Positions 703 to 30,150 of a stretch of 32,762 bases of DNA are shown here, one piece after another. The DNA is from Salpingoeca rosetta. Its lineage: Eukaryota; Protista; Choanoflagellata. The stretch spans positions 2,010,230 to 2,042,991 of the forward strand of contig JAWQFM010000007.1 in assembly GCA_033442325.1 (NCBI GenBank). The letters are read 5' to 3'. The notes under the pieces were generated by a model. The model did not search any database, was not told the origin of the DNA, and worked only from the letters and a program-made list of their open reading frames with translations. The translations under genes were made by a program, and so were the position numbers. Each line of letters opens with the position of its first letter. The stretch's first letter is position 1.

Positions 703-3882
<3,180 letters not shown>

Positions 3883-10608: not shown

Positions 10609-10643
<35 letters not shown>

Positions 10644-12592
10644 ACTGTCGAGCAGCATGCACCTGGGCGACACGCGTCGCCATGCTGGAGAAGCCTATGT
10701 TGGCGGCGCTGCTTTTCAGGGCGGTGCTCAGAGCAACTCGCGCGAATGGCTGCAAGCACTGGAAGAACACTCGCAACAGCGAATGAGGCGCCAGGTTGGA
10801 GACAGCAGCACGCCCCTGCCAACGCCGGTGCCTTCCAGCACGCTGTTGGCGCCGTCGAGCTCCAGCACGGTGGTGCCCTTGCCATCTTCGCTCTTGTCCG
10901 CAACCGTGTCTCCAACACCAACGCCGGCAGCGTCCAGCTTCTCCTTCGTACCTACGCCTTCGCCGTCGGCTTCCGCCACGCTGGCACCCTCGCCATCCAT
11001 CTCCACCTCCATTGCGGCACCGTCGACGTTGATTGCAACACCAACCACAACGGTTGTTGCGCCGTCCCCGACACCAACGCCCACGTCGTCAGCGCTTGTG
11101 TCTACGCCGACGCCAACGCCAACGCCAGTGCTCTGCCCGGACGAGTTTTACCTGCTCGCCGGCTCCTGTGTTCCCTGCCGCGTTTGCAACGCCACGCAGT
11201 TTGAGGAGTCGCCATGCGCTGACAACCAGAACCGCGTGTGTCGGCCCCTGCGCGTGTGTGGCCCAGAGGAGTACGAGCTGCAGCCACCGACACCAACCAG
11301 CAACCGCGAATGCACAGACCTCGTGCAGCAGTGCCTTCCCATCACGCCAAACTACAACTGGCTCAGCCTGCACGTGCTCCCCGAAGACAGCAACACCATC
11401 TCCGCCCAGTTTCTGGCGTCGTTGGGGGCTGCTGTTGCTGGCGACATGCTCATCAGCAGCGAAGGGGCCGTCACGGCCACCCTCAACGCTTCCGGCACGT
11501 GGGAGAACCTCGACGCCTTCCCTTCCGTGTACGCTCGCCGATTTGATCTCAGCACCGCCGCCACCAACACCAGCGAGTGGTGCGTCCTCGGCGTGCCCGT
11601 GTCACCAGACCCAGGCCTGAGCCTGAGTGTCGGTCCAAACAGGATTGGCATCACGCTGCCACAGCAAACGCCAATCCAGACCGCCTTTGCCAACTTTCCC
11701 GGTCTCGTTGACAACACCGCCATTCTCAGCCAGCCGGAGAACGGAGGCGCGGCAACCTTCTTCAACGGTACCTGGTACACGTCGACAGATCTCAGCAACC
11801 ACCTCATCCCAGGCGTTGGCTACGTCCTCTTTGCACAGCAACCAGCCACCCTTGTCCTAGCTTCCAACTCCAGCGACACCAGCGATGATCGCCGCCGCCG
11901 CCGCCGCGACCTGGGCTATGGCAGCTCGGCTGCTGGTGCTCTGGGCGAGTTTGACATTGGTGATGCAGCTGCGTGGACAAGCCAGTCCCTGCACACCCTA
12001 CCACAGTCGTCACAACAGCAGCACCAGCGACAGCAGCAGCCAGCTGTGCTGAGCACGGGCTCTGACGCGTGGCTGGTGAGCTCGAAGAAACACCCACAGC
12101 AGCAAGGCCGCGTGCACGCTGCTGCCGATCATCGACGTGCAACCACCACCGTCACCATCTTTGCGCAAGTGTTTGAGGATGGGAACCTCATCAGCGCGCA
12201 TGGCTCCGCCCTCTCCGTGTGGCTGCTCGACCCTTTGATGACGTCAGCGTCATCCGCGACCTTCATCAACGCAACCTACGTTGCGGATGGGCCCGCCGGC
12301 CCCATGTTCATGATCACGGCGGTCGTGCCAGCCCCTTCCACAGCAGCACCAGCACCAGCAGCATCAGCATCGCAGCAGCTGCAACAACAGCAGCAACAGC
12401 AGCTGCTGCTACAGTTTGCAGTGCTGGATGCGGACACCCAGCGCGTGCTCGCTGTGGAGGACACGCTTTCGCTACCCAGCGACGCAGACGGGTCAGCAAT
12501 CACGCACGGACATGCATTCCGTCCAATCCCGCTCTCCGTGTCTGCGCCCGCATCAGCCACCGGCAACACCCCTCCCTCGCAGCACCAACAGC

Positions 12593-12665
<73 letters not shown>

Positions 12666-15600
12666 CACGTTTGGGGCGGATGACTTCACATCAACGGCAA
12701 TCGATGCCCTGTCCAGCATCCAACTTTCCCCAGACACTGTGCTCGCGACGACATACGTACAGGTGCTGGACGAGTTTGGGCCCGTGACAGATGATGGGAC
12801 GCAGCTGGCTGTCGTGTGCGGCGCTGTGCGTGTTGCTGTTGCCCTGCTTGCGGATGGGCCTGCTGGACCCACATTTCAGATTCCCATGATAGCGCAGTCT
12901 CGTTTCGAGACACATGCCCGCCACGGCTGTGAGTTCCGGTTTGAGGTGCAGCGCCCACACACGGCATCGCCCACCGTCTCCACTGCAGGCGATGGCGGCG
13001 ATGGTGTGTTGGAGTGCATTCCAGCCACCTCAATCGATCTGCTCCACGGATCAGGCGCCGCCTACCGCCCCGTACACTGCCGCGTCGCCTCGGAGACACC
13101 AGAAGAGGCTCTGACGCAGCCTGCGCGTGGTGACGGCGAGCACGCCGCCATGCAGCTGCTGGGGTCGTCCGTTGCTGGCTCAAGAGCACCCCTGTTTGCG
13201 CAGTTTGCTGATTCGCATCAGCAGCATCAGCAGCACATGCAGCAGCACCATCGTCGCCATCGCCGCGAGGCGTCCATGTGGACACCGCGCCCTGGCCTGC
13301 GCTATGCAATGATCGTGCATGCCACAGTGCGCTACAAGAGCGACCTCAGTTACGTGCAGCAGCTGGGAAGCCGGCTTGCGTGCGTGGACGCAGATGGCGT
13401 CATCAACGCCGCAGACCTGTCCATCGGGCCAACAGGCGAGCCATGGTTCCAGCTGGCGTGCGCAAGCAACCTGCCGTCCACCTCGGATACCATCATGCTG
13501 CAGGTGTTTGACGCAAACAGCTCGACCACCGTACAGACGGCGCTGCCGCTTGCCTTTGCGGCTGAGACCGTGCTCGGCGCCATTGATGCCCCGCTCGTGC
13601 TGGACATCGAGACTGTTTGCGGGCCGGGCGAGTTTGAGCTGCGGCCGCCCACCAACACCACAGACCGCGTGTGTCGGCGCGTTCGCGAGTGCAACGAGCT
13701 GCAGTACCAGCAGCAGGCACCCACCGCCACGTCCAACCGCATTTGTGAGTACATCACAAACTGTACCGTCAACCAGTACGAGCGCGTACCGCCGACCAAC
13801 ACCAGCGACCGCCAATGCGGCACCATCGCCGCGTACGTGCCACCACTCATCCGCGTGACAGAGGCCATCAACCTGCTCACGTTTGGCCTGCTTGGTCGCA
13901 CGGAGGACAACGCAACCACCATCGAGTACGGTGCTCCCGTTGCCTCCGCCCCAAACGCCGCAGGCAGCCTGACAGTTGGGCTTGGCCCCGTCACCGCAAG
14001 CGTGAGCACACGCCACACACCACAGCCCGCGGCCAGTGTCCGCATCGTGCTTGCTGGCACGGGCGACGTGTGGCCGGACGACCCACGCGTGGATGCGCGT
14101 GCACAGGTGTACGACGCCGCGGGCAACGCCCTCACGGCCTCGGCACAGGTCATCTTGCGCGTGCTTCCGGGCCCTCAGCTGGCAGGCGCAGACCCGACAA
14201 CCGTGGAGACCACCTGCACGACCACTGCCCGCTGTCGGCTGCGCACGACGCTCCCTTCAGCATGGTTCACCGTGGGCGGCAACGCCACCGTGGAGGCTGC
14301 CTTGGCTGGGCCTGCGCCCGTGTTCCAGAGCATCGGTGTGCTCATGGTCCAGCCCATCATCACCTACTCGTACGACCGTGACGTCGTCGTTGGCATTCCC
14401 AACAACAACCTGTTTGTGGGCTCCACGCTGACGGCGGTTGTGCGCGGCGATGCGGGCGACTATGCCGTGCGCTCCTTCCAGCTGACCTTCGATGCCCCGC
14501 CCGGCCTGCGCATTGAGGGCGTCACCTACGATGGCGCGACGTGGGCCGCGACCGTGGAGACACAGGGCACCTCCCGCGCCACCATCGTGGCCAACCCGGC
14601 CAACCCCGATGAGCGCCCCTCGGACATGGTCTTTGCGGACGAGGAGCTGTGTCGCGTGTCGCTGCGCATTGACAACTCTGCGCTGGAGGGAAGCACGCTG
14701 CAGCTGACCACCACCATCAACTTCCTCAGCAACGTCAAGGGGGAGAAGATTCGCCCGCGAGACACCACCACCCCCGTTGTTGCCCAAGCCGCTGACCGCC
14801 GCGGCCTCCATGTCGGCGCGGCACACCTCTTTGTCACGCCAAATGTGCCCACGGGCATCATCGCCGCGGTCCCCAATGCAGAGCTGCTCAACTTTGCCAC
14901 CGTGAGCAACGCTGCCGTGACCAGCGCCATGACCGTGTACCGCGTCACCGCCAACGGTGCCCTCACCGCCGTCACGTCTGGTGGGCTCACCTGCGTGTCC
15001 GCCAACACGGGCCGCGTCCGCGTGGCCGTGGACTGCAGCGCCGTGCGCCTGGACGGCACCGAAACGCTTGCCGGCCCAGCGTCCATCTTCGTCGCCCTGT
15101 CGGAGCGCGGCCTGCTCCTGCGCGACATGCCCACGGTCACGGTGTGGCAGCTCGATGGCCAGCCGCGCATTGAGGTCGCAGACCCGGTCCTCAACAGGGT
15201 GGACGGATGGGCGCCTGACAGCAACCCAGACTGCCTCGGTCCCGTGTACCAGCACGCCGAGGTGACCGTGCTGGCCAACTTCACCGACGCCTCTGCGCTC
15301 CTGCTGGACGTTGACGTGAGCACGCGCGCTGCACCCCGCCTCACGGCCACAGACACACGCGTCGTTGCCTTTGATCGGGGCAACGTTGTGGGCCAGAACA
15401 CGGGCTTCACGTTTATCCACGTGCTCTCTGCTGCTGGCGTGCGCCTTGGTGCTGCGCCCGTGCAGGTCAGCGATGACAGCGTGGTGCCGGCCCGTCTGGA
15501 CGTCACTGTTGTGGAGTCGATTGCGCTTCAGGCGCGCTCTGGTGCGTTTGACCCCTTGGACACCAGCACCGCCGTTGCTGCCATCCAGAACACGCTCACC

Positions 15601-18600
15601 AGCGAGTTCCAGCAGGCGCACGTGCGCGTGGACCTGCACCTGTCCGATGACGCGCTCTACACGCTCTCACCCCAAGACTTTGAGCTACGCACCCTGAACC
15701 CGCTGGTGCTTGGCGTGGTTGGCGGGCCTTCGCAGGCATCCACCGTGCAGGCCCTGGGCACCGGCGTGGGCCCCGTGCTGTACGTCAACTGGACCAGCCC
15801 AGCAACATGTGACCGTGTGTTCTCCCTCGCCACGACAGCCAGCGTCAACGTCACCCTGCCCGCGCCACGGGATGTGGCTGTCACACTCTCCGTGAACCGC
15901 ATCACCCCTGTTGGCGACGCCGCCAGTCTTCCCGGCGTTGGCATTGCCACGCAGGCCACCGTGACCGTTGTCGTGGAGTACGTGGATGATAGCACGCAGG
16001 ACCTCTCCCTGGATGACCGCCTCGTCGTTGTTGCGCAGGATCCAAGTGCCCTGACTGTCACACGTGGCCCCGGCAGCAGCCGGTTTGCCGTGGCAGCCAC
16101 CAACCGCTCTGGCACCTTCCAGCTGCTCGTCTCGTTCCAGCACCTGTCCATCACGCAGACGGCCAGCATCGACGTTGCGCTCGCGGACACGCTCACCCTC
16201 ACCACGGCGCCCTACCCGGCATACCCTGGTTCCAGTGCGCTGTCTGCGACGACGCTGAGCCTCATTGGCGGGACGGGCACGTTCCAGCAGGCGCAGCTCA
16301 CAGCGAGGCTGTCCCTGCTGAACGGGCCCACCTTCGACGTGACCACGGCGCCCGCCATCCGCTACAGCGCACTTGCACCAAACTCAACCACAGAGCCGGC
16401 CACGAACATCACCGTGTCGCCCGCGGGGCGCATTTCACCGACAGCGGCAACAACCGCAGACATTGCGGCCTCCTTCCAGGACATTGCTGCCAGCAAGGTG
16501 CGCGTGCTTGTGTCGAGCACGCCTGTGCTCATTGCAGAGTTTATCAACGTGGACGTGCCGTATTTCCTTGTTGGGATGCGTGGCGTGGGGTCCACCCAGG
16601 TGCGCTTCGGTGTGCGCCTCTCCGACGATCGGCAGCTGCCCGCGTCCTTCCTCTTCCCGAACAACAACATGTTCCGCTTCTCCGCCGCCTTTGCCACGTT
16701 TTCCCTCGACACCATCGCTGCCTCCGTGTCGGAGGGCGGCCGCGTGCTCCTGCACGACAACCTCCCCGAGGAAGCAACGCTGACCATCGCTGCTGCGCAC
16801 AACGCCACACTCGCCGTGAGCAGGCCCTTCACGTGCAACTTGAATCCGGAGTTTGGCGACATGGACGCCGGCGAGACACAGGGCGTGCCTTTGCCGCCCA
16901 CCGTCCCCGGCGCAACCGTCGCCATCCCTGTCCGAATCAACACTGGCAGTGCATCTGTGCAGGCCATCAAGCTCTCGCTGCAGTACGACCCAGCCCACCT
17001 CGACTTTGTCAGCGCTGTGGCTGGTGCAGATTGGCCTGGTGGTGCGTTCCTCTTCACTGCAAACGACCCACCCGGCATTGTGGATGTGGGCGGCGTTGCC
17101 ACACCCTTCACCGGGTCGGCTGCCGAGATTGCAGTCGTCACGCTGCGAGTGCTGGAGGCGGCGCGTGACATGCGCGTGCCGCTGCTGGGTGAGGTGGTGG
17201 AGCTCTCCGACGACAACAACGACCCCGTTGGTCCGTTCCGCGGCGTGCCCTCTGTTGCGGCCGACCTGGAAGTGATCGTGGGCCAGGCGCGCAGGCGCAG
17301 GTCGGAAGATGGCGCCGGCATGTCGGCAGCCATCATCGACGCCGCACCCACGCTCACCCGCCTTCGCCGCCGCACACGCACCAACCCACTTGGCGACGCC
17401 AACGCGGACGGTGTGTTCAGCCTGGCCGATGCCTCGTTTGCACAGCAGTACCTCACCCGCCTCATCTTCGACCCCACATACGGCAGCGACTTCACGCAGG
17501 AGCAGCTCGACGCCCTGGACATTGACCACAACAACGACCGCAACCCAGACGACGTGTTCTACCTTGCAAGCGTTGACTTCCGCAACTACCGCTTCTTCAA
17601 CAACATCTCCATCACGCCCGTCTCCAACAACACTGGGTGCCACGTCACCTTGCAGACGCGCGTGTTTGAGGGCGGCGACGTCCCAGCCAACGGCAACAAC
17701 ACGTTCGTCTTCTTCGACCTGGAGTCTGCCAACACAGCGTTTGCTGGCTTTGTGAACAACACCATCCTGCTGCAGGGGCAGCTGGAAACCAGAAACAAGG
17801 GGCCCGGCCTCAACGGCGCTCTCCTTCGCGCTGAATTCGTGGGCAACGGCACCTTCCTCATTGAGGCGTCTGTGCCGTCTGCATTTGACAACATTGGTGT
17901 GTCCCTTCTCATCGCCACCACAGACGCGACAGACCAAGGCAGCAACGCTCGCACCACCCGCATCCTCGGCGGCAGCGTTGACCCACCCTTCCTCTACACG
18001 GGCACCGTGTCCTTCACCTTGAACGTCAACCCCCAGACCAGTGTTCCAATCCGCCTCTCGGGCGGCTATGATCCGCTCGACACGTTCGACAACATGCTCG
18101 GGTCAGAGAACTGCCACCGCTCCTTTCCTTGCGATATGGACGAGTACGTTGTCGTGCCAGCCACGCCAACCTCCGCAGCCACGTGCGCAGCATGCCGCGT
18201 GTGCAATGCCACGGAGTACGAGACTGTGGAGTGTACCATGGACACCAACAGGGAATGCGCAGCCTGTGACGTGTGCATCGGTGACACATACCAGGCCCAA
18301 GCCTGCACACCACACTCCAACACGCTTTGTCTTCCTTGTGGCAACTGCACTTCGTCGCAATACATCGTGGCAGAGTGCACGGACACCACCCCTACCGTTT
18401 GCGGTGATTGTGGCGCCTGCAACCCTGATGAATATGTCAGCGCAAACTGCACAGAGTTTGCACCCACCATGTGCATGGACTGTGACACGTGCGACCCAGG
18501 GCAGTACATCCAGCATCCGTGCACAACCTACTTCAACACGGACTGCGAGGACTGCCGCGTGTGCAATGCAACCACAGAATACGAAGTCAGCCCGTGCCTG

Positions 18601-21600
18601 CTCACGCAGAACCGCGAATGCGAGCTCTGCGACATCTGCGGCGACGAGCAGTACGAGACAACCCCGTGCGGTGCCTTTTCCAACCGCGAGTGCGCCAACT
18701 GCTCAGTGTGCCTGATGGGGCAATATGAGGTGACGCCATGCACGCCTACTCAGAACAGGTTCTGCGACAACTGCAGCCCTTGTGGTTCCGGACAGTACAT
18801 CCTTGTGCCGTGTCAGGACACCATGGATACCATTTGCGACGACTGCGATACGTGCGACCCAGGCTTTTTCATTGAGAGAAACTGCACAGAGGACGCCAAC
18901 ACCAAATGTGCGCGTTGCGGAACCTGCCCGACAGAAACATACATCTCCTCCCCGTGCACCATGTTCAAGAACACCACGTGCTCTGCATGCAGGGTGTGCG
19001 AGGACGACGAATACCAGGACCGCGATTGCGAAAACGGCCTGAACCGCATCTGCAAGGAGATCCGAAACTGCCAGGCGGACGAGATTGAGGTCGCGCCTCC
19101 AACGCCGACCTCGGACAGAGTCTGTGTCAAGGTCGTGCCAGGTGCGCTGCCGCCGGTTGAGTTCCTGCCCACGCTTGGGCTGGGGTTCTACCTGAACAAC
19201 ACATACGCGGTATCAAACCAGGTGAGCCAGCGCGCCATCGGCGAGTTCTGGGACGGCAGCACGGGCCAGTCAGGCACAGTGCGGGTGCAGCTGGCAGACA
19301 CAACGGCCAGCGCCACGTACATGCAGGACCGTCTGCCAGCGGTGACGGTGTCCGGGGTGATCGCAGACCGCGTGGTGTGGTACGACGACCGCACGGTGCA
19401 CTGCCGCGTGCAGGTGCGGGACAGGCGGTTTGACGCGCACACGGAGAGCGCGCGGGTTGACCTTGAGGCGACGCCTGTCGGGTTCAGCGGGACGGCTGTG
19501 ACGGCGTCATGCGCCACAGCAACGACGGGGCAGTGCACGATTGACCTGAGCGTGCCGCTGTCGTGGTTTGGGGTTGTGGGGCAGGACGGTGACCGCACGG
19601 TGTCGCTTGCGTACGGGATCCGCGGGAGCGGGAGCACGGTGGATGCAGGCACGGTGACGCTGCGGCCGGCGCCGGAGGTGACGGTGTCGCGCGACGTTGT
19701 TGCTGTTGTGCCGCACCGCGACCTGTACCGGGGCGACCGGTTCACGGTGCCCGTGCAAGCAAACGCAGAGTACTACATCAACACGTGGCAGCTGCGCATT
19801 GACACGACGGCTGGGGAGGTTGAGATTGAGTCGATTGTGTATGACGAGGACGTGTGGACGGCGTCTGTGCTGATTGATGACGACAAGACGGCGGCGTCGA
19901 TCAACGGCGGGCCGGCAGACACGCTGTCGCGGCCGACGGGCCCGTCGCCGGGAGCGGAGGCGCTGTGCACGGTGAACCTGCGGGTGACTGGGGACGCGCC
20001 GCTGAGCCAGGCGAGCATGGTGCTTGTGACGGTGCTGTCGCTGTTTGACAGCAAGGGCCAGCAGCCGCTGCTGACGCCGACGGCGGCGACGACGGTTGAC
20101 CGCGATGGCACGCGGCGCGGTGCTGGCGCTGTGTACATTGTCGAGGACAGCGTGATGGGGGTGTTTGCGTGGGCCGGACAGGGCAGCCTTGTGAACACGG
20201 TGCCGCTGAACGGCGTTGGGATCACGAGCGTGGTGAGCGTGTGCGCGGTGCTCAAGTCGAGCGGCGGGTGCCCGGCGCTGACGAGCGGGCTGACGTGCGT
20301 GAGCGACGAGCCGGGCGCCGTTGCCGTTGGCGGCGGGTGCGCGCGGCTGGAGCTGAGCAGCAGCACGGACATGGGCTCTGCGCAGGTGAACGTGAGCGTG
20401 AGCCACGGCACGAGCGGGCACTCGACGCTGTTTGCGGTGCGGGTGTGGTACCCGGAGAGCGTGATGCTGACTGTGGACGATGACCGGCTGAGCCGCGTGG
20501 CTGGGTGGCGCGATTCCTCTGCGGGCTGCATGGACCGCTTCCAGAGCTCGCGCGTGCGCGCGCGGGGTGTGTTTGTGAGCGGCGCGGATCGGTTTGAGGC
20601 CGTGGTTGACGAGCAGGTGTCTGGGTACCTTGAGAGCAACGACAGCGGTGTGATGACGGTGGCTGGGCTCGAGGTGCAGGGCGTGTCGGCAGGAACTGCG
20701 AGCGTGCGGCTGCAGACTGATGCTGGCGTGAGCGTGCTTGTGCAGGTTGCTGATGAGACGGTCTCTGTGCAGCGGCTGCAGGCGCACGTTGTTGGCGACG
20801 TGCTGCTGAGCGGAGTGCCGTCGAGCGTTGAGCTTGGGGACGAGGTGGCGGCTGTTGCGATGGTGCAGCAGCGGCTGACGCAGGAGTTTGAGCGCGCGGA
20901 CGTGTACACGGAGGCTGTGCTGTCTGATGGCACGCGGCTTGGCGTGACGGAGGCAATGGGCCTTGTGCTTGGGAGCCGGGATCCCGTTGTTGTGCGCATT
21001 GTGAACGAGACGATGCGGGCAGCGGACGAGGACATTGAGGCAGTTGGGACGGGCCAGGGCCTGCTGCTTGAGGCGACGTGGTACGACGAGAGCGGGTGCA
21101 ACGGCACGGCGCCTGTGATTGGGGCCGGGCTTGGGCAGGTTGACATCGTGCTGCCGCTGCCTGAGCGAGTGATTGTCGACCTGAGCTCGTCAAGCATGAC
21201 GTACGCCGAGGACGCTGCGGCCAGCATTCCGGGGGGCCCGCCGTTGTCTGTGAGCGTGCGCGTGTACTTTGAGTTTGCGGACGGGCGGCGACAGGAGATG
21301 ACGACCGACGGCCGCACGATGTACGACGGCGTGAGCGCGGACGTTTCTGATGTGTTCCGAGTTGTGCGTGGGGAGAGCGCTGTGCGGCTTGTGCCGACGG
21401 GGAACGTGGGCACGGGACAGCTGCGGGTGAACTTCACGCACGTGAACGTGACGGGAAGCGCGAGCGTGGAGGTTGTTGTTGCGACTGGGCTTGAGATTAC
21501 GCCGCGGCCGTTCCCGACGTACAGCGGGTCTGGGAGCGTTGTTGAGACTGAGCTGAGCCCGATCGCCGGATCTGGGGTGTACCAGAGGGCGGTGTTTGAC

Positions 21601-24600
21601 GCTGTGATTACGATCAGCGACGGGCGGCAGTACGGCGTTGCGACTGCTGGAGCGATGGCGTACGAGCTGAGCCGGCCTGACGTGCTGGCGGTGGTTGGCA
21701 CGAACCGCGTGCAGCGGGTGGGGACGGCGACGGGGCCTGCCTCTGTTGTTGTGCGGGGCGTGTTTGGGTCGACGTTTGCTGGGCAGAGCAACGTGACGAG
21801 CGCCGGCGTTGAGATGCGGCTGAGCAACGAGACGCTGAGCGTGGTGAGCGTGGACGGGCTGAGCTTTGTGTCGACGCTGAGCGGACAGGCGGGCGTGAGC
21901 CGGTCGCAGGCGGTGTGCGGGATAACGCTGTCTGACGGGACGCGGTGGACGAGCGGGGCGCTGTTTCCGTCTGGGACGCTTGCGCTGAGCAACGTGCTGA
22001 TGTTTGAGACGAGCGAGGTGCTTGCTGCGAGCGTGAACGGGGCGTCTGGGCTTGTGCAGCTTGAGGGCAATTGGTACGAGCAGGTGACGCTGACGGCGCG
22101 TGCAGTGGACACGGGCGCGAGCGCATCGCGGATGTTTGCGTGCAACCTCTCGCCTGTGACTGGGGACATTGACCTTGGGTCGGCGACTGGAGTCCCTGTG
22201 CCTGCTGTGAGCGTTGGGGCGCGGTTCAGCCTGAGCGTGCGTGTTGCGCTTGGGTCGCGGGAGCTTGCGTCGATGGACGTGACTGTTGAGTATGACGCGG
22301 GCCTGCTGCGTGCCGTGGGTGTTGAGACGGGCAGCGGATGGCCTGGTGGCCCGTTTACGGGGAACCTGGACACGCCTGGGATGGCGCGGTTTGGCGGGGC
22401 AAGCGATCCTGTGAGCGGGACGCGCGAGCTTGCTGTTGTTGAGTTTGAGGTACTTGGCGATGGGCTTGCGTCGCTGGGCGGGTTTGTGACGACGGTGAGC
22501 GATGCGGACGGGGCTGCGATTATCCCTGACGGCACTGAGTTTGTTGCTGGCGCTGTTGAGGTGCTGACTGGCAGCGGGCCCGGGCGACGTCGGCGTGATA
22601 TCGCTGCCTCAGCCAGCGCTGACGGCACTACCGTCACTGCAGCGCTGCTGAGTGGACGAGAGTGGGTGCAGGCCGCACGGGAGCGACGCAGCGAGCGACG
22701 CCGTGAGCAGCAGGCTGTGCGGGTGCGACGCGCAGACTCGTGCACGCCCAAGCCGTGCCTGACATGCGACCCTGTGCGGCAGACGGGCGACACGGACGGT
22801 GACTGCCTGTTTGATGTGCGGGACGTGAGCTTTGCGCGCATGTACCTGAACTGGGTTGCGCTTGAGGACACTGCGCAGCTTGCGCAGGTGACGGAGCCGC
22901 AGCTGGTCAACCTGGACGCGGACCAGAACGATGCCGTGAACACGCAGGACGTGGACTTCCTGCTGAAGGTTAACTTTGGGCTGTACCACTTCTTTGCCAA
23001 CCTGAGCGTGGAGAGTGTCGGGGAGTCTCTGGACGCGTGCGAGCTGAGCATCAGCTTGCGGCTGATTGCTGGCGGCGCTGGTGCTGGCGACTCACCGGCA
23101 AACACGAACCAGACGTTCCTGTACTTTGACATTGAGAGCGAGGACGCGTCGCTTGCACCTGCGTTTGCGAGCAGCGTTGTTGTTGTTGGCAGCGCTGTTG
23201 CTGGGCTGAACAAGGGTGCCGGGTACAACGGCGGGCTGTGGCGCGCTGCGCCGCTTGGTGACGAGGGGTACTTTGGCGTGCGTGTTGCCACGGGGATCTC
23301 GCTGGAGAACATTGGGCTGTCGCTGATCCAGGGCACGGTGTCACCGTCTGGGGTTGGTGCGAATGCGCGCACGACGCCGATTCTCGGGGGCAGCCCGGAC
23401 CCTGCCAAGTTCCGGTTCACGAGCCCGCTTCGGTTTGACCTTGTTGTGAACGCGCAGACGACGATTGAGTTTGTTGCTGGCGCTGGGTACGACCCCTTCA
23501 CGGCCTTCAACAACACCCTCAGCAGCCTGCAGTGCCAGGCCGCAAAGGGGTGCCCTGTTGGCTTCCGTCTCGTGGAGAATGCAACACTCACATCACCCCC
23601 GGTGTGTGAGCCCATTCCGGTTGTGACCTACTCGCACCCACCCACGTTTTCCCTCCTGCCACCGTTTTCGCCATCGCTGTTTGCCACGGCGGATGACCCG
23701 AGTCAGTATGTGTCCGTTACGTCGCTGTTCTCAGCACGCGGTCAGACCCAGCTTGGAGACGTGTCGACCGTGTTCACCAGCCCCCGTTTCTCTGCTGCTT
23801 CCATTTCCGACGTGGACGTGTTTGTGACGCCACAAGTGCTTCAAACCGACAACCCAACGCTGACTGTGCTTGCTCAGGGCCGTGATGCTGCTGGCTCGTC
23901 GTTCTTCGTTGATGGAGACGTTGTCGTCGTGCTGCGTGATCGCGCGAGTGGTCAGGAAGTGGTGGATCAGTGCACGGCTGGGGTTGATGGCACGTGCGCC
24001 CTGACTGCGACCGTGCCTCAAACCTGGCTTGACGCTGCACCGGGCACAATTGACGTGCTTGCGTATGCGGGTGGCAGCCCTGGGTCGGCGCGAGTGTTTG
24101 CGAGCGTCGACGTTGCAGCTGGACCATCACCGCTGCAGTCACGTGCAGTGACGGCTGTGCTCCCCCGGCAGACGCTGTATCCGGGCACGGTGTACGAGGC
24201 GGAGGTTTACGCCAACTTCGCCCGCAGCATCGCCGCGTTCTCGCTGACCGTGAATGTGACACAGAGCCTTGTGGTTGAGCGCCTGCGGGTTGATGAGCAG
24301 TACTGGAACGCCGTGTCTGACGTGTTCTCGCCGACAACGGCGGCCATCAACGCGATTGTGTCGGATGACAGCAACCTGGACACTGGCGAGCAGTTGTTAT
24401 GCAAGATCGAGTTTGTAGTGAACGAAACAGTCACGGCAGACATGGGCTCCATGTCCGTTGTTGTGGAGGAGCTTGCAGATGAGTTTAGCAACCGCCTTTC
24501 GCTGCGGGGAACATTCGACCCAACATTTGCGTACTACGAGACGCGTGACGGCACGCAGTCCGGTCCGCGCGGGTCTGTGTACATTGGTGACGATGTGGTG

Positions 24601-27600
24601 GTCGGCGTATTTGCCACGCTTCAATCGAGTGCGTTCAACACGGCGTCGCTTGGGCTGGGCGCAACGGTTGTGCCTGTCCAGCTGAATGCGCTGACCCGAT
24701 CTGGGCAGGTGTTGACTGGCGCCCAAGTGTCTGCAGCAGACGCGGCAGCCTGCTCCGTTGTGCCGGCGAGCGCGGGCACCCTGAGCGGAGACTGCACGCA
24801 ACTGGTGCTGAACGCGACGCAGAGCGTGCCGGGCCAGACGATGCGAGTTTCCTTTGGCGCAGCGAGTTCGGGGGCGCAGGCCACCAACTACACGCTTGAG
24901 GCGGTGATTGCTGACCAGCTATCAGTTGTGCTCGATGACGCTGAGCTGAATGCGGTGGCTTCCCCCGCGGATTGCCCCACAGCCGTGTACCAGGGCAGCC
25001 GTGTCCGCGTGACGGCCGTGATTGAGCGTGCAGACATGACGAGCATTGGCGTAGATGTGACGCAGCGTGTGCTGCCATTCCTGCGCGTGCGTGACAGCGA
25101 CGTTGCGACGCTAAACACCACGCTGGACGGCACGCTGTATGTTGTCGGCACTGCGCCTGGCACGACGTTTGTGGACGTGCTGTTCCTTGGCGGCGACGTT
25201 GCAGCAACTGCTGCCGTCAACGTCAGTAGCACCCCTGTGGGCATTGAACGCATTGGCGTGGAGATGGTCACTGGGCTTGGAGCGGAAACGGCGCTGACAG
25301 CATCCCCGTATGGCTTTGCCGTGAACGTGACCAAGGTGGCGCAACTTGAGTTTGAGGGCGATGTTGCAGCATTCAAGGCCAGCGTGCTGTACGCTGACGG
25401 CCTGCGGGAGGATCTGGACCACCGCGCACGCGGCGTCGTGCTGGCCTTCAACAGCACGGATGTGCTGCAGGTTGATGGCACGGCAGCAGCAGGTGGCGGG
25501 CCTGCTCTCTCTGCTTTGGCTGTTGGCAGCGGCGTTGTTGCGGTGAACGTGACCTGGACACCACCCAACTGCACGCAGGCGCTGGCTGTTGGGATGCAGG
25601 ATGTTGTTGTTGCGTTGCAGCAGCCTGTGCGGGTGATTGTGGGCGTGTCAGCGAACGTGCTGACCCCTGCCTCGGATCCAGCCGCGTGTGCTGGTGTGGC
25701 GACGAGGACATCGCTAGTGGTGCAGCTTGAGTACGCTGACGGGCATCGCGTTGACGCAACAGCCGATCCGCGGACCGTGGTGGATGTGGATGACGCGGTG
25801 CTTGACGCCGAGGACAGGCTGTCGCTTGCACCAGACGCTCTCCCGGGCGCGATTGAGGTTGTTGCAAACGCGACGGCGACCGCCGGTGCTGCTGGCGTGC
25901 GTGTGTCGTTTACCCACTTGCCGCTGGCGGAGACTGTGAGTGTGGCGGTTGTACGTGCGGAGCAGCTCTCGGTGTTGCTGCACCCTTACCCGGCGTTTGC
26001 TGGCTCGACCAATGTGGACGCCAGTCCCCTCAACCCGATTGCAGACACGTCCGTGTACCAGCAGGCGCTTGCGTCTGTGGTTCTCGTGGTGTCGTCGCCT
26101 GTTGGCCAAGTTGATGTCTCGGACACGGCTGTGGTAGAGGCTGCAAACAGCAGCGTGTCGGTTGTTGCCGGCTCGCGCATGGTGACTGTTGAGGATCCGG
26201 CGGCGCCCAGCGGGCTCGTGCGCGCGACGCTGTGCTCCATCAGCAACACGACGCAGATTGGCATCAGCCAAACGCCGGTGTTTGTGCGGGACATTGATGA
26301 AGTGTCGTTCCCCGACACGTTTGAGGGCGAGCGAGGCTCGCAGGGGCAGGTGACCACGGGTGTGCTGCTTGATGATGGCACACGTCTGCCTGCGGATGTG
26401 CTTACGCCGCGCCTGCGCACGAACTTGCCTCTTCTTCAGTTCACACTGTCTGCGGTGAACAACGGCGGCAGGAATGGCCCGGCGCTTGTCGTGGACAATG
26501 CGACCGGTGTAGTGACGCTGCTTGGCAACAGTGCAGGCTACGTGGAGCTGGTGGTGCAGTCGAGACTCAACCCCAACGTGACGCGCAGCATCGTGATGGC
26601 TGCCAACCTGCTGCCGGCTGTGGGTGACATTGACATTGGAAGCAGCACAGGTCCAGCTGATGGTGGCCCGCACCGGGTTGGCGACGAATTCACGCTTGCC
26701 GTGCGTGTGAACACGGGCACGTACACCGTGGCCGCGGTTGACGTGACGCTGCAGTACAACGCCAGCGTCGTGGAGGCTGTGCGCGTGGAGCGAGGGCCGG
26801 ACTGGATTGGTGGGACGTTCATCGCGACACTCAACGACCCCGTCGGCGAGATTGCGTTTGGCGGCATTGCATCTGGCATCCGCGGCATGGACACAATTGC
26901 GCTGGTGACGCTGCGCGTGCTTGATGCCGTTTCTGACCCCATGATCACGGTGATGAGCGGAACCATCAACACGCTGGCCACGGCAAACCAGGACCCTGTT
27001 GGCGATGACACGCCTCGGCCAATGGTGGCTGGAGACATTCCCATTCGCGTGCAGCCCGTGTCGCGTCGCCGTCGCAGCGACAGCAGTGGCAGTACCGGCG
27101 CGATGCTGACACACGCAGCAGCAGCAGCAACAGCATCGTCATCGTCATCATCAGCACCACCAGAGGCTGTTGCTGCTGCTGCGCGCGTGCGTCGGGCCAT
27201 GTGCTCAGAGTACGTGCGTGGTGACACCAACCTGGACTGCGCGTTTGACCTGAACGACGTGACGTTCCTGCAGTCATACCTGCTCAGCTTGCACAGCCCG
27301 AGCGGGCCGTTGAGTGTGACGCCAGAGCAGCTGGAGGAGCTGGATGCAGACAACTCTGGCACGCCAGACACGTTGGACGCGCTGTTCCTGCTGCGCACCA
27401 ACTTCAGACAGCTTCGCTTTGTCAGCACACCACGCCTGTCGCGCCGCCCCGCCATGGGCCCCACGGGCGCATGCACGTACCGGCTTGTCGTGGATGTGTA
27501 CACCAAGTCTGGACCTGCGCCTCCGGAGCAGACGGACGTGTTTGTTGACTTTGAGAGCTTGGGCATGGACTTGGGCGCTCTTGTGTCCAACCTGTCCTTC

Positions 27601-30150
27601 TCGCAAGGATCCCTTGATCAGCTGAAGCCGAGCCCATTCGACGGCTTCCTGGCGCGTGCGCAGCCGTCTGCTGCCAACAGCGGCGTGTGGGAGCTGGAGT
27701 TCACCACCCGTGAGGTGCTTGGCAACCTGACGCTGACGCTGATTCAGGCGACCACAGATGCGCTTGGCAACACATCGCCGTCACGCTCGCTCGTGCTGAC
27801 AGGAGATCGGGTTTCACCGTTCACATACCCGAACAGCCTGGTGATGAACGTGACACACGGTGCTGGCGGTGTCGCACAGAGCACGGTGCGGTTTGGCCCC
27901 TCTGGGTACAACCCTCTTGTGGAAACGAGCGTCTTCGATGGGCCATGCTCACCTATTCTCATCACCACAACTACCACTACCACCACCACTACGACTACGA
28001 CGACAACAACCACCACAACAACAACAACAACCACCACCACCACTACGACTGCAACAACGACGACAAGCACGAGCACCACGACGACGAGCAGGAGGCCGCC
28101 AATAACCACCAGCTCAACGTCCACCAGTGTCCCCATTACGATTGGGCCGCCGCAAAAGTCCGAGACGTTCTTTGAATCTGCAGCTGGCATCATCGTGATT
28201 GTGGTGGTCGTGCTGCTGCTGCTGTGCTGCTGCTGTTGCCTGTTCTACGTGTGGCGGCGGCGCATGCCGGAGGAAGGCGACGAGGAGTCGGGCCACGGCA
28301 TGTTTGGTCGGTCCATGACGTACGACGTGCGCGACCACAAGCCACATCGCCTCGAGCACGACACGCGCAACGTGACGCTGGTTGGCAAACAGAAGCGCGG
28401 GTCACTGGCTGCGTCCCAGGCGCTCGACGAGGACAACTTCCTGCAGGTGTCGTCGTTCCCTGAGGTTGTGAGCCGCGAGGAGGACATGACCAACGGGAAA
28501 GACGTGGAAACCATCTCGCTTGACCTGCAGGAGTCTGTTGGCGTGGAGCAGGGCCAAGGCGAGGCGGAGGGCGGTGAGGACATGTTTGAGACGTCGTTTG
28601 GAACAACACCGACATCGCAGGCAGAGGGCCTGAGGGAGACGGAGGTGGTGCTGAGCGACGACGGCGCGCCCGGTGGCAAGGTGGAGGAGGTGGTGACACC
28701 CCCGCACCTGTCCACATCCGCGTACCTCAACCCGCCCGTGGACGACACGGACAGCGTGCAGCGGGTGCCTGTTGAGGGCGGCAGCACGGGTCTGTATGGC
28801 GAGACGGGCGCCCCTGCCACCACGTACCTGCGACCTCCGAGTGACTCTGAGGACGAAGCGACCGAAATGCTTGGTGCTGGCCTGGCCATGGCCATGGCTG
28901 ACAAGGGTCAGGGTGGTGGTGACGAAGACCGCCGCGCGTCGTTTGTGCCAAACCCGTTTGATCCTGCCAACGAGAGCTCATCCGAGGACTTTTACAGCGA
29001 CGAGGAGGAGGGTGCAGGAGCAGGAGAACAAGACCAAGAGCGAGCGGCGCTGGGCCCAGAGGGCGAGCGTGAAGACACGCGTGCAGGACAACGCGACGAA
29101 GAACAACAAGAAGAAGAGGAGGCGGCGCCACCGCGGTCGGCACGATCGTCCAAGGAAGCGTGGGGCGAGCCAGTGCATGAGCCGCAATACCTGGACGTGA
29201 GACCCGAACCGGAGCAGCCTGGCACGGACACTGGCGGTGCTGTTGAGCACGTGTCGCAGTATCTCGACGTGAAACCGGGCGAACCCGGCGATGGCGATGG
29301 CGCTGGCCCGAGCGGCGAGCGTGAACATGGCGGTGACGGTGAGGAGGAGGACGGCGAAGGTGGCTTGCAGTTCTTCGATGATGATGAGGTTGAGTTTGTG
29401 CCGGACGATGGGCAGGACGCGGCGTGGACAGAGAGCACGATGATGGAGGAGAAGGGGTCGTCGTCACACTCGCGCTCGCCCGAACCGGAGACGAAGGTGG
29501 ACGAGGCGGAAGGCAGCGCTGAGACATCGTTTGCAATGACAGCAGCAACCACGGGCGACAACGATGGCGAAGCTGAGGATGATGATGCTGATGAGAGCAC
29601 GGACACCTTCCCCTCCGACTCACAGCAGCAGCAGCAGCAGCAGCAGCCGCGGTCTCGGCGTCCGCTGCCGCCGGCGCAAGAAGAGGAGCAGGAGGTGAAG
29701 AAAGACATCCTTCCACTGACGGTGTACAAGCGGGTGGGCGAAGGCGTTGGGTTCAGCATCTACGGAGGAACGGAGACGGGTGAGGCCGGCATCTTTGTCT
29801 CGCGCGTGGATGAGGAAGGTCCCGCTGCTGGCATTGTGCGGCCGGATGACGAGGTGCTGGCGGTTGGCTTGAACAAGATGCGTGACCTGACCAGCACCGA
29901 GGCGGACTTGGTGATGGAGGAGGCAAGCGGCTGCGAGACGGTGAAGCTTGTGGTTGCGCGCGTGCCTGACAAGAAGCCGAGCGCTGATCCTCGGAGTACG
30001 CTGTCTGTTGGGCCGGGCAAGTTTATGTTGTCGAAGCCGCTTCGCTCACGCCGCCGCTCCGCCAACCTCTCTGGCATGGCCAACCCGTCCAACCCACACC
30101 AGCCCGACCACGTCTACGATGAGACGTTTGACGTGTCGGAGTTTGCTTAG
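9799..30150 (+). CDS. Giant intronless single-pass cell-surface protein (~6,783 aa): Cys-rich TNFR-like repeats, 3x [TMEM132-like module - cohesin - furin linker - dockerin], Thr stalk, TM, acidic Tyr-motif tail, PDZ
   Basis: Uninterrupted ORF 9745-30150 with first ATG at 9799; the true start could be a later Met such as 10066. There is strong codon bias and none of the long GT/CA arrays that mark introns elsewhere in the window. Hydrophobic signal-like stretch GPAIVALLLLFLATGPAALM at ~10183-10242, a clear three-fold internal repeat, a TM helix at 28186-28254 and a PDZ domain at ~29707-29961. Confidence 0.92.
13840..17283 (+). other. TMEM132-like module 1 (cohesin-like domain, Ig-like/BIG-type domains, terminal cohesin-like domain)
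   Basis: The sequence VTVW...IEVADPVLNRVDGW...C...YQHAEVTVLANF...DV...L...DTRVVAF...VVGQNTGFTFIHVLS...LGAAPVQVSDDSV...LDV matches the TMEM132 extracellular consensus as I recall it. Cohesin-like strands appear at ~14374-14840 and ~16891-17283 (VAIPVRINTG..SVQAIKLSLQYDPAHLDFVS...EIAVVTLRV). Confidence 0.7.
17392..17590 (+). other. Dockerin-like domain 1 (duplicated Ca-binding loop-helix)
   Basis: GDANADGVFSLADASFAQQYL ... LDIDHNNDRNPDDVFYL fits the dockerin pattern GDxNxDGxxxxxD...(Y)L / DxD/NxDxxxxxxD..L. Confidence 0.75.
18130..19125 (+). repeat. Array of 14 tandem ~24-aa TNFR-like Cys repeats (CxxC-x4/5-Y-x4-C-x4-N/D-x2-C)
   Basis: Examples: CRVCNATEYETVECTMDTNREC, CDTCDPGQYIQHPCTTYFNTDC, CSVCLMGQYEVTPCTPTQNRFC. 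Smaller clusters occur at ~10336-10524, ~11134-11337, ~13618-13818 and ~23533-23607. Confidence 0.85.
19140..22575 (+). other. TMEM132-like module 2 with terminal cohesin-like domain (~22198-22570)
   Basis: Collinear homology with module 1 (VRVWYPESVMLTVDDDRLSRVAGW...C..RFQ; CNLSPVTGDIDLG; LASMDVTVEYDAGLLRAV...GWPGG.F). Confidence 0.7.
22786..22990 (+). other. Dockerin-like domain 2
   Basis: GDTDGDCLFDVRDVSFARMYL ... LDADQNDAVNTQDVDFLL. Confidence 0.75.
23620..27060 (+). other. TMEM132-like module 3 with terminal cohesin-like domain (~26665-27060)
   Basis: Collinear homology with modules 1-2 (LDDAELNAV...C..AVYQGSRVRV; ANLLPAVGDIDIG; VAAVDVTLQYNASVVEAV...DWIGGTF..LNDP.G.I.FGG). Confidence 0.7.
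27220..27420 (+). other. Dockerin-like domain 3
   Basis: GDTNLDCAFDLNDVTFLQSYLL ... LDADNSGTPDTLDALFLLR. Confidence 0.75.
27964..28263 (+). other. Poly-Thr mucin-like stalk followed by a single TM helix with CCCCC and an RRR stop-transfer signal
   Basis: A run of about 30 Thr, then GIIVIVVVVLLLLCCCCCLFYVWRRR (28186-28263). Confidence 0.9.
29707..29961 (+). other. Cytoplasmic PDZ domain of the giant protein
   Basis: LTVYKRVGEGVGFSIYGG...GIFVSRVDEEGPAAGIVRPDDEVLAV...T.TEA...M...TVKLVVAR: a GLGF-like loop (GVGF) and the canonical PDZ pattern. Confidence 0.88.

What the first reader, a model, noticed from the sequence alone, without database searches (positions are those of the whole stretch)
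16891..27420. Three cohesin-[furin linker]-dockerin junctions: a candidate self-assembling, cellulosome-like surface complex in a unicellular eukaryote
Seen in sequence: three times, a cohesin-like beta domain is followed by RRRR (17290, 22585, 27064), a short non-conserved Ala/Ser-rich spacer, a second R-x-R-R type site (RLRRRTR 17359; RVRR 22720; RVRR 27184), and then a duplicated Ca-loop dockerin-like motif (17392, 22786, 27220). Established: cohesin-dockerin is the high-affinity, Ca-dependent pair of bacterial cellulosomes, and furin/kexin cut after R-x-K/R-R in the secretory pathway. Inference: cleavage removes each spacer and yields four parts: a distal subunit ending in cohesin, two middle subunits with an N-terminal dockerin and a C-terminal cohesin, and a membrane anchor (dockerin-stalk-TM-PDZ). 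These could re-associate non-covalently. Because middle subunits carry both halves, they could also swap, polymerise head-to-tail into fibres or bridge cells, with Ca- or force-dependent release. I know of no described eukaryotic system with this logic.
Basis: partly seen in the sequence, partly recalled or inferred. Interest (0 to 1): 0.92.

Follow-up and report, generated by a model that had tools for sequence, protein, structure and literature searches.

The report
Cut-and-clasp cohesin-dockerin joints, three times
A giant surface protein of the choanoflagellate Salpingoeca rosetta contains three bacterial-type cohesin-dockerin pairs, each split by a floppy spacer with two conserved protease-cutting sites, so it is probably cut into four pieces that stay joined by calcium-dependent clasps rather than assembling freely like a cellulosome.

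Summary
One 6,801-aa open frame (9745-30150, +) holds three ~1,500-aa TMEM132-like modules. Each ends in a Pfam-significant cohesin, then RRRR, a non-conserved spacer, an RxRR site, and a dockerin with two intact Ca loops plus a beta-sandwich.

The modelled third cohesin superposes on solved type I cohesins (Z 16, 2.0 A). A profile of the dockerin family finds solved dockerins at 1e-8.

The cassette is a conserved unit. I found 994 database representatives, and every one that carries an organism name is a choanoflagellate. Furin-type motifs are about 95 times denser in the linkers than elsewhere in the same proteins.

The evidence favours a clasp within one chain over free, cellulosome-like assembly:
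- All 23 cohesins of this type in the genome sit directly before a dockerin, with no orphan of either.
- AlphaFold2 packs the whole cassette as one body (pTM 0.88), with only the spacer disordered.
- The strongest covarying pair in the cassette links a cohesin Gly to a dockerin Phe.
- Dockerin helix residues are junction-specific and conserved among orthologues.

Neither cleavage nor binding has been tested at the bench. The scan had already found this cassette on other DNA of this genome, and those follow-ups reached the same reading.

The parts
9745..30150 (+). Giant uninterrupted ORF, 6,801 aa. It reads: N-terminal hydrophobic signal-like stretch, TNFR-type Cys repeats, three TMEM132-like modules, Thr stalk, transmembrane helix, acidic tail with PDZ domain.
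16843..17289 (+). Cohesin 1 (aa 2367-2515)
   Evidence: Pfam Cohesin 39.9 bits against a cut-off of 24.1; aligned in A3
17290..17301 (+). Junction 1, first convertase-type site: RRRR followed by Ser
17302..17358 (+). Spacer 1, 19 aa, not conserved; predicted to be excised
17359..17379 (+). Junction 1, second convertase-type site: RLRRRTR
17392..17595 (+). Dockerin 1 (aa 2550-2617), two Ca loops 41 residues apart
   Evidence: Pfam Dockerin_1 18.1 bits, below the cut-off; loops intact; 78% identical to the Barroeca orthologue, whose dockerin passes Pfam
17596..18096 (+). Post-dockerin beta-sandwich 1 (aa 2618-2784)
   Evidence: conserved with the dockerin in the family alignment
22150..22578 (+). 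Cohesin 2 (aa 4136-4278)
   Evidence: Pfam Cohesin 40.9 bits
22585..22596 (+). Junction 2, first site: RRRR followed by Asp
22597..22719 (+). Spacer 2, 41 aa, with extra basic clusters (RERR, RRR)
22720..22731 (+). Junction 2, second site: RVRR followed by Ala
22732..22992 (+). Cys-rich cap (three Cys, spaced as in the family's CxxxPCxxC) plus dockerin 2 (aa 4330-4416)
   Evidence: no Pfam hit on its own; loops intact and aligned in the family profile that finds solved dockerins
22993..23517 (+). Post-dockerin beta-sandwich 2
26611..27060 (+). Cohesin 3 (aa 5623-5772)
   Evidence: Pfam 36.3 bits; AlphaFold2 pLDDT above 90; Z 16.0, rmsd 2.0 A over 133 aa to 6kgc_A, also 2vn5_A and 1ohz_A
27064..27075 (+). 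Junction 3, first site: RRRR followed by Ser
27076..27183 (+). Spacer 3, 36 aa, Ala/Ser-rich; the only low-confidence stretch inside the model (only the last few residues are also low)
   Evidence: model 10-residue blocks from 151 to 200 average pLDDT 46-67
27184..27195 (+). Junction 3, second site: RVRR followed by Ala
27220..27420 (+). Dockerin 3 (aa 5826-5892)
   Evidence: Pfam Dockerin_1 23.2-23.8 bits against a cut-off of 22.9; three helices after two loops in the model
27421..27939 (+). Post-dockerin beta-sandwich 3
   Evidence: pLDDT above 90, all-beta
28189..28245 (+). Transmembrane helix (aa 6149-6167), preceded by a poly-Thr stalk
   Evidence: the only 19-aa window with mean hydropathy above 2.2; sequence
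29725..29955 (+). Cytoplasmic PDZ domain (aa 6661-6737)
   Evidence: Pfam PDZ 34.9 bits against a cut-off of 23.2

Best explanation
The window encodes a type I membrane protein of Salpingoeca rosetta whose ectodomain is built from three TMEM132-like modules. Each module ends in a cassette: cohesin, basic site, disordered spacer, basic site, dockerin, beta-sandwich. Proposed mechanism: while the chain folds in the Ca-rich ER, each cohesin binds the dockerin that follows it, and the 35-70-residue linker acts as a tether that guarantees the correct partner. Later in the secretory pathway a kexin/furin-type convertase cuts at both basic sites and removes the spacer, much as the C-peptide is removed from proinsulin. 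The mature protein is then four polypeptides (about 2,350, 1,742, 1,448 and 984 aa) held in order by three non-covalent, Ca-dependent cohesin-dockerin clasps. The last piece carries the stalk, the membrane anchor and the PDZ tail. Each clasp is a predetermined breaking or sensing point, comparable in role to the cleaved GAIN, SEA or Notch S1 junctions of animal receptors. Shown here: domain identities, conservation of the sites, disorder of the spacer, strict cohesin-dockerin adjacency, and covariation between the two domains. Inferred: that the sites are cut, that the pair binds, and what the joint is for.
For: (1) Cohesin identity: Pfam above threshold for all three; the model of cohesin 3 gives Z 16.0 and 2.0 A to solved type I cohesins. 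(2) Dockerin identity: six intact Ca loops; the family profile hits 2ccl_B at 9e-9 and 1ohz_B at 1.3e-8 over its full length; 82 of 128 family members hit Pfam Dockerin_1 on their own. (3) The cassette is a conserved unit: 994 representatives at E<=1e-3 and 196 at E<=1e-30, most of the top hits covering cohesin through beta-sandwich in one stretch; named members are Barroeca, Codosiga, Hartaetosiga and S. rosetta. (4) Sites: 120 of 129 cassettes have a dibasic within about 9 residues after the cohesin, 112 have a later one and 110 have both; R-x-[KR]-R is about 95-fold enriched in the linkers; P4 is Arg in 60 and 84 cases; P1' is S/D/A/E at site 1 and A/Q/S/N at site 2. (5) The spacer varies in length (6-72 aa between sites) and sequence, and is the only low-confidence stretch inside the model. 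(6) A convertase with Peptidase_S8 and P domains is encoded in the genome. (7) Pairing within one chain: 23 of 23 cohesins in the genome are followed by a dockerin on the same strand, with no orphans; no linker is shorter than 27 aa. (8) AlphaFold2 with 128 sequences gives pLDDT 91.1 and pTM 0.88 for the 443-aa cassette. A pTM that high is not expected if the 150-aa cohesin moved freely relative to the rest. (9) The highest MI-APC pair of the whole alignment is cohesin G84 with dockerin F265 (0.487, against 0.375 for the best within-domain pair and 0.203 for the best cohesin x beta-sandwich pair). The substitutions compensate in size: Gly pairs with Phe, larger cohesin residues with smaller dockerin residues. 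Other top dockerin partners are repeat positions 10, 11, 17, 20 and 21, at or next to the classical recognition positions (10, 11, 17, 18, 22; from my own knowledge). (10) In Codosiga the cassette (aa 643-1125) sits about 70 residues before a secretin-family 7TM domain (Pfam match from aa 1196), where adhesion GPCRs carry the cleaved GAIN domain.
Against: No experiment shows cleavage or binding. The one complex prediction gave no verdict. I could not see the coordinates or the error map of the AlphaFold2 model, so packing within the chain is inferred from pTM alone, and the network may simply reproduce cohesin-dockerin complexes it has learned. The covariation rests on 128 related sequences, so shared ancestry can inflate it. 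Nineteen of 129 cassettes lack one or both dibasic sites (for example L042 in this genome), so cutting cannot be obligatory for every copy. Dockerins 1 and 2 do not pass Pfam individually. RNA reads over the region are very sparse.
Confidence: 0.6

Rival explanations
1. After cleavage the four parts separate and re-associate between molecules. Middle pieces carrying both a dockerin and a cohesin swap, polymerise head-to-tail or bridge cells, as a cellulosome-like self-assembling matrix.
For: Middle pieces would indeed carry a dockerin at one end and a cohesin at the other. The genome has 23 cassettes in more than ten giant proteins that could in principle cross-react. Non-covalent joints can exchange.
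Against: There are no dockerin-only or cohesin-only proteins of this type in the genome. Cohesin and adjacent dockerin covary. Dockerin recognition positions differ between the three junctions and are conserved within orthologous junctions, which fits private partners. AlphaFold2 packs the adjacent pair in one chain.
Confidence: 0.12
2. The cohesin and dockerin form a fixed structural pair within one chain, but the chain is not cut. The basic clusters serve another purpose, such as glycosaminoglycan or membrane binding, or a structural role.
For: Cleavage is untested. Some cassettes lack canonical sites.
Against: The motif is specifically R-x-[KR]-R with Arg at P4 and small or acidic P1' residues. 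There are two clusters at fixed places: one directly after the last cohesin strand, the other about 17 residues before the first Ca loop. They flank a spacer that is free to vary, and the motif is about 95-fold enriched. This is the signature of convertase processing, not of a charge patch. A convertase is present.
Confidence: 0.13
3. The sites are cut, but the cohesin and dockerin of one junction do not hold each other. Cleavage sheds soluble ectodomain pieces, and the cohesins and dockerins bind other ligands.
For: Shedding of ectodomains by convertases is common (my own knowledge). The complex prediction gave no verdict.
Against: Strict 1:1 adjacency of the two domains across hundreds of proteins with otherwise different architectures; covariation between them; a confident single-body model.
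Confidence: 0.1
4. The spacers are short in-frame introns, or the cassette is a chance resemblance.
For: None beyond the lack of conservation of the spacers.
Against: A Trinity transcript of Codosiga (P0025) contains its linker with both basic sites. No splice joints were seen in RNA reads here, though coverage is thin. Domain statistics exclude chance.
Confidence: 0.01

Closest known systems
Type I cohesin-dockerin pairs of bacterial cellulosomes (e.g. Clostridium thermocellum CipA cohesin with Xyn10B dockerin, PDB 1OHZ)
   Same: The cohesin has the same fold (Z 14-16). The dockerin is homologous, with a duplicated Ca-binding loop-helix. Covarying positions fall at or next to the helix positions that set specificity in bacteria (the list of bacterial positions is from my own knowledge).
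   Different: Here the two domains lie in one eukaryotic polypeptide, always adjacent, joined by a linker with convertase sites. There are no enzymes, no multi-cohesin scaffoldin and no separate dockerin-bearing cargo. The dockerin carries a Cys-rich cap and a following beta-sandwich.
TMEM132 family and the choanoflagellate/sponge cadherins with cohesin domains (coherins, lefftyrins, hedglings; Sanchez-Pulido & Ponting 2017, PMC6030884)
   Same: The Ig_TMEM132 4th, 5th and 6th domains occur in each module. Relatives combine them with cadherin repeats. Cohesin domains in these lineages are already on record.
   Different: That paper reports no dockerin in vertebrates and does not describe a dockerin next to the cohesin or the paired cleavage sites. 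The cohesin studied here is a second one, at the C-terminal end of the module, not the one placed before the Ig domains in TMEM132.
Cleaved, non-covalently held receptor junctions: GAIN domain of adhesion GPCRs, SEA domain of mucins, Notch S1 furin site in the heterodimerisation domain (my own knowledge)
   Same: The proposed outcome is the same: a chain cut in the secretory pathway whose halves stay together non-covalently and can part under force. In Codosiga the cassette occupies the position just before a 7TM domain.
   Different: The folds are unrelated. Here there are two convertase cuts that remove a spacer rather than one cut or autoproteolysis, and the joint is a Ca-dependent two-domain plug and socket that occurs up to three or four times in one protein.
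Proinsulin C-peptide excision (my own knowledge)
   Same: Two basic convertase sites flank a variable connecting peptide that tethers two parts while they pair and is then removed.
   Different: Insulin chains are held by disulfides. Here the parts would be held by a domain-domain interface. There is no homology.
Bacterial proteins that carry both a cohesin and a dockerin (ESM Atlas clusters named 'Cohesin/Dockerin type I domain-containing protein') and anaerobic-fungal cellulosomes (my own knowledge)
   Same: In the bacterial proteins both domains lie in one polypeptide, so they are a possible evolutionary source. The fungal case shows that eukaryotes can use a dockerin-scaffoldin logic.
   Different: The bacterial proteins are about 200 aa and lack convertase sites. 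Fungal dockerins are not homologous to bacterial ones.

Membership tests
Cohesin (Pfam PF00963) | Sequence match above the curated threshold | tested here: met
   39.9, 40.9 and 36.3 bits against 24.1 for the three copies
Cohesin (Pfam PF00963) | Nine-stranded jelly-roll fold that superposes on solved cohesins | tested here: met
   Model of copy 3: Z 16.0, rmsd 2.0 A over 133 aa to 6kgc_A; also 2vn5_A, 4uyp_A and 1ohz_A, Z 14-16. Copies 1 and 2 were not modelled well.
Cohesin (Pfam PF00963) | Binds a dockerin | tested here: inconclusive
   Indirect support from pTM 0.88 and covariation. The complex prediction gave no verdict.
Dockerin type I (Pfam PF00404) | Sequence match above the curated threshold | tested here: inconclusive
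   Copy 3 scores 23.2-23.8 against 22.9 (met); copy 1 scores 18.1 (below); copy 2 has no hit. At family level, 82 of 128 members hit, and the family profile finds solved dockerins at 1e-8.
Dockerin type I (Pfam PF00404) | Duplicated 12-residue Ca-binding loop followed by a helix, with Asp/Asn at loop positions 1, 3, 5 and 12 | tested here: met
   All six loops keep the ligand pattern, 40-42 residues apart. The model shows loop-helix, short helix, loop-helix.
Dockerin type I (Pfam PF00404) | Three-dimensional superposition on a solved dockerin | not tested
Cellulosome-like system (scaffoldin plus dockerin-bearing subunits) | Separate proteins: multi-cohesin scaffold without its own matching dockerins, and cargo proteins with a dockerin but no cohesin | tested here: not met
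   In the window's genome all 21 dockerin matches and all 23 cohesin matches fall in adjacent cohesin-then-dockerin pairs.
Cellulosome-like system (scaffoldin plus dockerin-bearing subunits) | Dockerins attached to carbohydrate-active enzymes | tested here: not met
   The partners are TNFR repeats, TMEM132 Ig domains, cadherins, VWA, 7TM and PDZ.
Furin/kexin (proprotein convertase) substrate | R-x-[KR]-R motif in an exposed, disordered, lumenal or extracellular segment | tested here: met
   Motifs at all six places; spacer pLDDT below 50; the region lies between the signal-like stretch and the transmembrane helix.
Furin/kexin (proprotein convertase) substrate | A convertase present in the organism | tested here: met
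   Four P-domain matches; the ORF in L002 carries Peptidase_S8 plus P_proprotein.
Furin/kexin (proprotein convertase) substrate | Actual cleavage | not testable with these tools
   Needs protein chemistry.
TMEM132-like ectodomain | Tandem Ig domains 4th-5th-6th | tested here: met
   Module 1 has the 4th, 5th and 6th above threshold. Module 2 has the 4th above and the 5th below. Module 3 has only a weak 5th. The modules align end to end at 27-31% identity.
TMEM132-like ectodomain | Cohesin-like third domain before the Ig domains | tested here: inconclusive
   No Pfam match in the segments before the Ig domains at E<=1.

The most novel reading that the evidence does not exclude
Choanoflagellates took a bacterial cohesin-dockerin pair and turned it into a general-purpose, convertase-matured breakable joint. 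It is used in dozens of receptor types (cadherins, 7TM receptors, TNFR/TMEM132 giants) and up to three or four times in one chain. Each junction has a private recognition code, so a multi-piece ectodomain assembles in fixed order and can shed defined pieces under force or low Ca. This would be a class of cleaved non-covalent receptor junction independent of GAIN, SEA and Notch, present in the closest relatives of animals.
Probability: 0.5. Interest if true: 0.85.

Novelty: new variant of a known kind. Interest (0 to 1): 0.72.

Why it matters
Cohesin-dockerin is one of the strongest known non-covalent protein pairs, and it is thought of as a bacterial tool for building cellulosomes. [quoted passage not shown] This offers a concrete, testable mechanism for how giant choanoflagellate surface proteins are assembled, sensed or shed. 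It may be a functional counterpart of the GAIN, SEA and Notch junctions that arose from different parts. It also bears on the unanswered question of what the TMEM132 and 'coherin' cohesin domains bind (PMC6030884). The three junctions in one protein, each with its own recognition residues, form a natural set for testing orthogonal pairing. S. rosetta can be transfected and edited (my own knowledge), so the sites can be mutated in vivo.

Tried and rejected
- A self-BLAST of the whole protein printed no repeat HSPs. Cutting it into three chunks showed the modules.
- The search for homologous proteins with the 461-aa cassette found nothing because of its length window. With Codosiga P0025 it found only 4 proteins.
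- The first AlphaFold2 run, on a 3-sequence alignment, was poor (pLDDT 48.8). It was replaced by a 128-sequence run.
- Complex prediction on cohesin 3 plus dockerin-sandwich 3 plus 2 Ca gave no verdict (score 0.08). It ran ESMFold2 without my alignments. This is no evidence either way.
- Pfam found nothing in the segments where a TMEM132-type cohesin-like domain would lie.
- The two searches of the ESM Atlas returned only bacterial cohesin or dockerin clusters and no whole-cassette analogue.
- The papers by Peer et al. 2009 and Nichols et al. 2012 are not held. I therefore could not check whether they list adjacent cohesin-dockerin pairs in Monosiga.
- RNA reads are too few (22-62 reads per run over 5.8 kb) to say more than that the region is transcribed at a low level without visible splicing. 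I kept to 5,838 letters.
- The fold of the post-dockerin beta-sandwich was not identified. Integrin alpha-chain hits have rmsd 17 A and mean little.
- The sponge occurrence claimed in earlier scan notes was not tested.
- Considered and rejected: spacers as introns, and chance resemblance (see rivals).

Full report
**What is in the window.** A single stop-free frame runs from 9745 to 30150 on the + strand and encodes 6,801 aa. A 467-aa stretch of S. rosetta protein PTSG_03507 matches another locus of the same genome at 100% identity. The genome has 55.4 Mb in 68 contigs, so it is Salpingoeca rosetta. Pfam finds TNFR-type Cys repeats, the TMEM132 Ig domains (4th, 5th, 6th), Cohesin, a weak Dockerin_1 and a C-terminal PDZ. 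Chunk-wise BLAST shows three ~1,500-aa modules that align end to end at 27-31% identity: aa 1301-2814, 3070-4621 and about 4700-6058. After module 3 come a poly-Thr stalk, one transmembrane helix (aa 6149-6167) and an acidic tail with the PDZ domain.

**The observation.** The domain before each RRRR passes Pfam Cohesin's gathering score (39.9, 40.9 and 36.3 bits against 24.1). Taken singly, dockerin 3 just passes Dockerin_1 (23.2-23.8 against 22.9), dockerin 1 is below it (18.1) and dockerin 2 gives no hit. All six loops keep Asp/Asn at the Ca-ligand positions 1, 3, 5 and 12, and the two loops of each dockerin are 40-42 residues apart.

**Are these true cohesins and dockerins?** A profile of the three copies, scored against 1.84 billion representatives, found 994 proteins at E<=1e-3 and 196 at E<=1e-30. 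Most of the best hits match the whole cassette, from cohesin to the beta domain, in one stretch. With 128 of these cassettes as alignment, AlphaFold2 modelled copy 3 at mean pLDDT 91.1. Its first 150 residues superpose on solved type I cohesins at Z 16.0 and 2.0 A over 133 residues (6kgc_A; also 2vn5_A, 4uyp_A, 1ohz_A). Foldseek agrees. A profile of the dockerin segment alone hits solved dockerins over its full length (2ccl_B 9e-9, 1ohz_B 1.3e-8, 4fl4_A, 4dh2_B). Of the 128 members, 82 hit Pfam Dockerin_1 individually. The model shows loop-helix, short helix, loop-helix. I did not obtain a 3D superposition of the dockerin alone.

**Are the basic sites meaningful?**
- In the alignment of the three copies the Arg residues of both sites are invariant, while the spacer differs in length (19, 41 and 36 aa) and in sequence.
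- In 129 cassettes from many proteins, 120 have a dibasic within about nine residues after the last cohesin strand, 112 have a later one and 110 have both. Fifty-three have a full R-x-[KR]-R at both.
- R-x-[KR]-R occurs 27.6 times per 1,000 aa in the linkers against 0.29 per 1,000 aa in the remaining 346,000 residues of the same proteins.
- P4 is Arg in 60 (site 1) and 84 (site 2) cases. P1' is mostly S/D/A/E at site 1 and A/Q/S/N at site 2.
- The second site typically lies about 17 residues before the first Ca loop and is usually followed by a three-Cys cap, CxxxPCxxC.
- The majority consensus of the family alignment itself reads RRRR ... RxRR.
- The spacer is the only low-confidence stretch inside the model; only the last few residues of the model are also low.
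- The genome encodes a convertase with subtilase and P domains.
- A Trinity transcript from Codosiga contains its linker, and no splice joint was seen in the sparse RNA reads here, so the spacers are not introns.

**Clasp within one chain, or assembly between molecules?** Four tests bear on this.
- *Pairing in the genome.* The family profiles find 21 dockerins and 23 cohesins. All fall in adjacent cohesin-then-dockerin pairs on the same strand. The two cohesins without a dockerin hit in that search proved to have a weaker dockerin downstream. There is no dockerin-only or cohesin-only gene of this type, which a cellulosome-like logic would need. One pair (C24, about 800.7-801.4 kb) is interrupted by a withheld stretch.
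- *Single-chain model.* The 443-aa model has pTM 0.88. If the 150-aa cohesin were free relative to the 250-aa dockerin-sandwich unit, such a value would not be expected. I could not see the error map, so this remains an inference.
- *Covariation.* The highest MI-APC score among all column pairs more than five residues apart is between cohesin G84 and dockerin F265 in model numbering. It scores 0.487, against 0.375 for the best within-domain pair and 0.203 for the best cohesin x beta-sandwich pair. Gly pairs with Phe in 82 sequences, and larger cohesin residues pair with smaller dockerin residues. The next pairs join cohesin residues 42-44, 69-71, 84-90 and 123 to dockerin repeat positions 10, 11, 17, 20 and 21. 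These lie at or next to the positions known from bacterial work to set cohesin specificity (my own knowledge). Shared ancestry among the 128 sequences can inflate such scores.
- *Junction-specific residues.* Each junction has its own orthologues: junction 1 matches Barroeca P0014 (dockerin 78% identical), junction 2 matches the second cassette of P0001 and junction 3 the fourth. The three junctions are only 35-41% identical to one another. The helix positions differ between junctions but are largely kept within orthologues. This fits private partners better than promiscuous swapping.

No linker among the 129 cassettes is shorter than 27 aa, which is enough to loop back. The one complex prediction gave no verdict and is not used.

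**Context elsewhere.** The cassette is mobile between architectures.
- In Codosiga hollandica it (aa 643-1125) sits about 70 residues before a secretin-family 7TM domain, whose Pfam match starts at aa 1196.
- In a metagenomic protein it sits before a VWA domain.
- In Hartaetosiga, and in large environmental ORFs, it sits among cadherin repeats.

The 7TM case puts it where adhesion GPCRs carry their self-cleaving GAIN domain.

**Mechanism proposed.** Each cohesin captures its own dockerin during folding, with the linker acting as a tether. A convertase then removes the spacer. The mature protein is four chains held by three Ca-dependent clasps, with the membrane-anchored piece carrying the PDZ tail. 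The joints would be defined breaking or sensing points. The domain identities, site conservation, adjacency and covariation are shown here. Cleavage, binding and purpose are inferred. I put the whole picture at about 0.6.

**Comparison with what is known.**
- Cohesin domains in choanoflagellate and sponge cadherins and in TMEM132 are on record. That paper notes that no dockerin is detectable in vertebrates (PMC6030884).
- None of the full-text searches found a paper that combines dockerin with choanoflagellates, sponges, cadherins or furin in this sense.
- Two older surveys that might list adjacent pairs are not held.
- Bacterial proteins with both domains exist.

I rate the finding a new variant of a known kind: known parts in a new arrangement with a new proposed use. 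It fails the membership test for a cellulosome-like system.

**Relation to earlier scan notes.** After forming this reading (note) I looked up earlier notes. Several follow-ups on paralogous loci of this genome describe the same cassette and reach the same cut-and-clasp reading. They are not independent evidence. One claims a sponge member, which I did not test.

Noticed in passing
window 10780, 11890-11907, 13255: There are further convertase-type sites in the N-terminal part of the same protein: RMRR at aa 346, RRRRRR at aa 716 and RRHRR at aa 1171. They lie between small domains and poly-Q/His runs. The distal piece may be cut further.
   Followed up: partly
window 16001-22000: GC skew of the coding strand changes sign inside the ORF, from about -0.14 at 16-18 kb to +0.28 at 20-22 kb, although the reading frame and the module architecture continue.
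   Followed up: no
window 29725-30150: The tail carries a PDZ domain and ends in ...SEFA. This could be a PDZ ligand (acidic residue at -2), so the tails might bind one another or fold back.
   Followed up: no
P0047 (2,185 aa; NCBI MAS41851.1): A protein with the full choanoflagellate-type cassette is filed in NCBI as a hypothetical protein of a Rhodobacteraceae metagenome-assembled genome, on an 8.8-kb contig. The contig is probably eukaryotic and was binned wrongly.
   Followed up: no
G000 C5:1866026-1866874 and C12:50997-51845; C18:328097-328402 and C4:205903-206208: Two pairs of cassette loci on different contigs give identical scores and nearly identical linkers. They are recent segmental duplicates or uncollapsed copies in the assembly.
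   Followed up: partly
P0025 (Codosiga hollandica), aa 643-1424: The cassette lies directly before a secretin-family 7TM domain, and Pfam finds no GPS/GAIN match. This is a candidate adhesion-type GPCR that uses the cohesin-dockerin joint in place of GAIN.
   Followed up: partly
window 27115-27166: RNA reads of three runs show an 'opposite strands' joint inside the Ala/Ser-coding low-complexity part of spacer 3. This is probably a library or mapping artefact of the GC-rich repeat.
   Followed up: no
window 27196-27240 and 22732-22810, and the family alignment A4: Conserved cysteines: three in the cap before the dockerin, one at position 6 of the first Ca loop, and one nearly invariant in the first strands of the beta-sandwich. 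Junction 1 of this protein lacks the cap and loop cysteines. The disulfide pattern is unknown.
   Followed up: no
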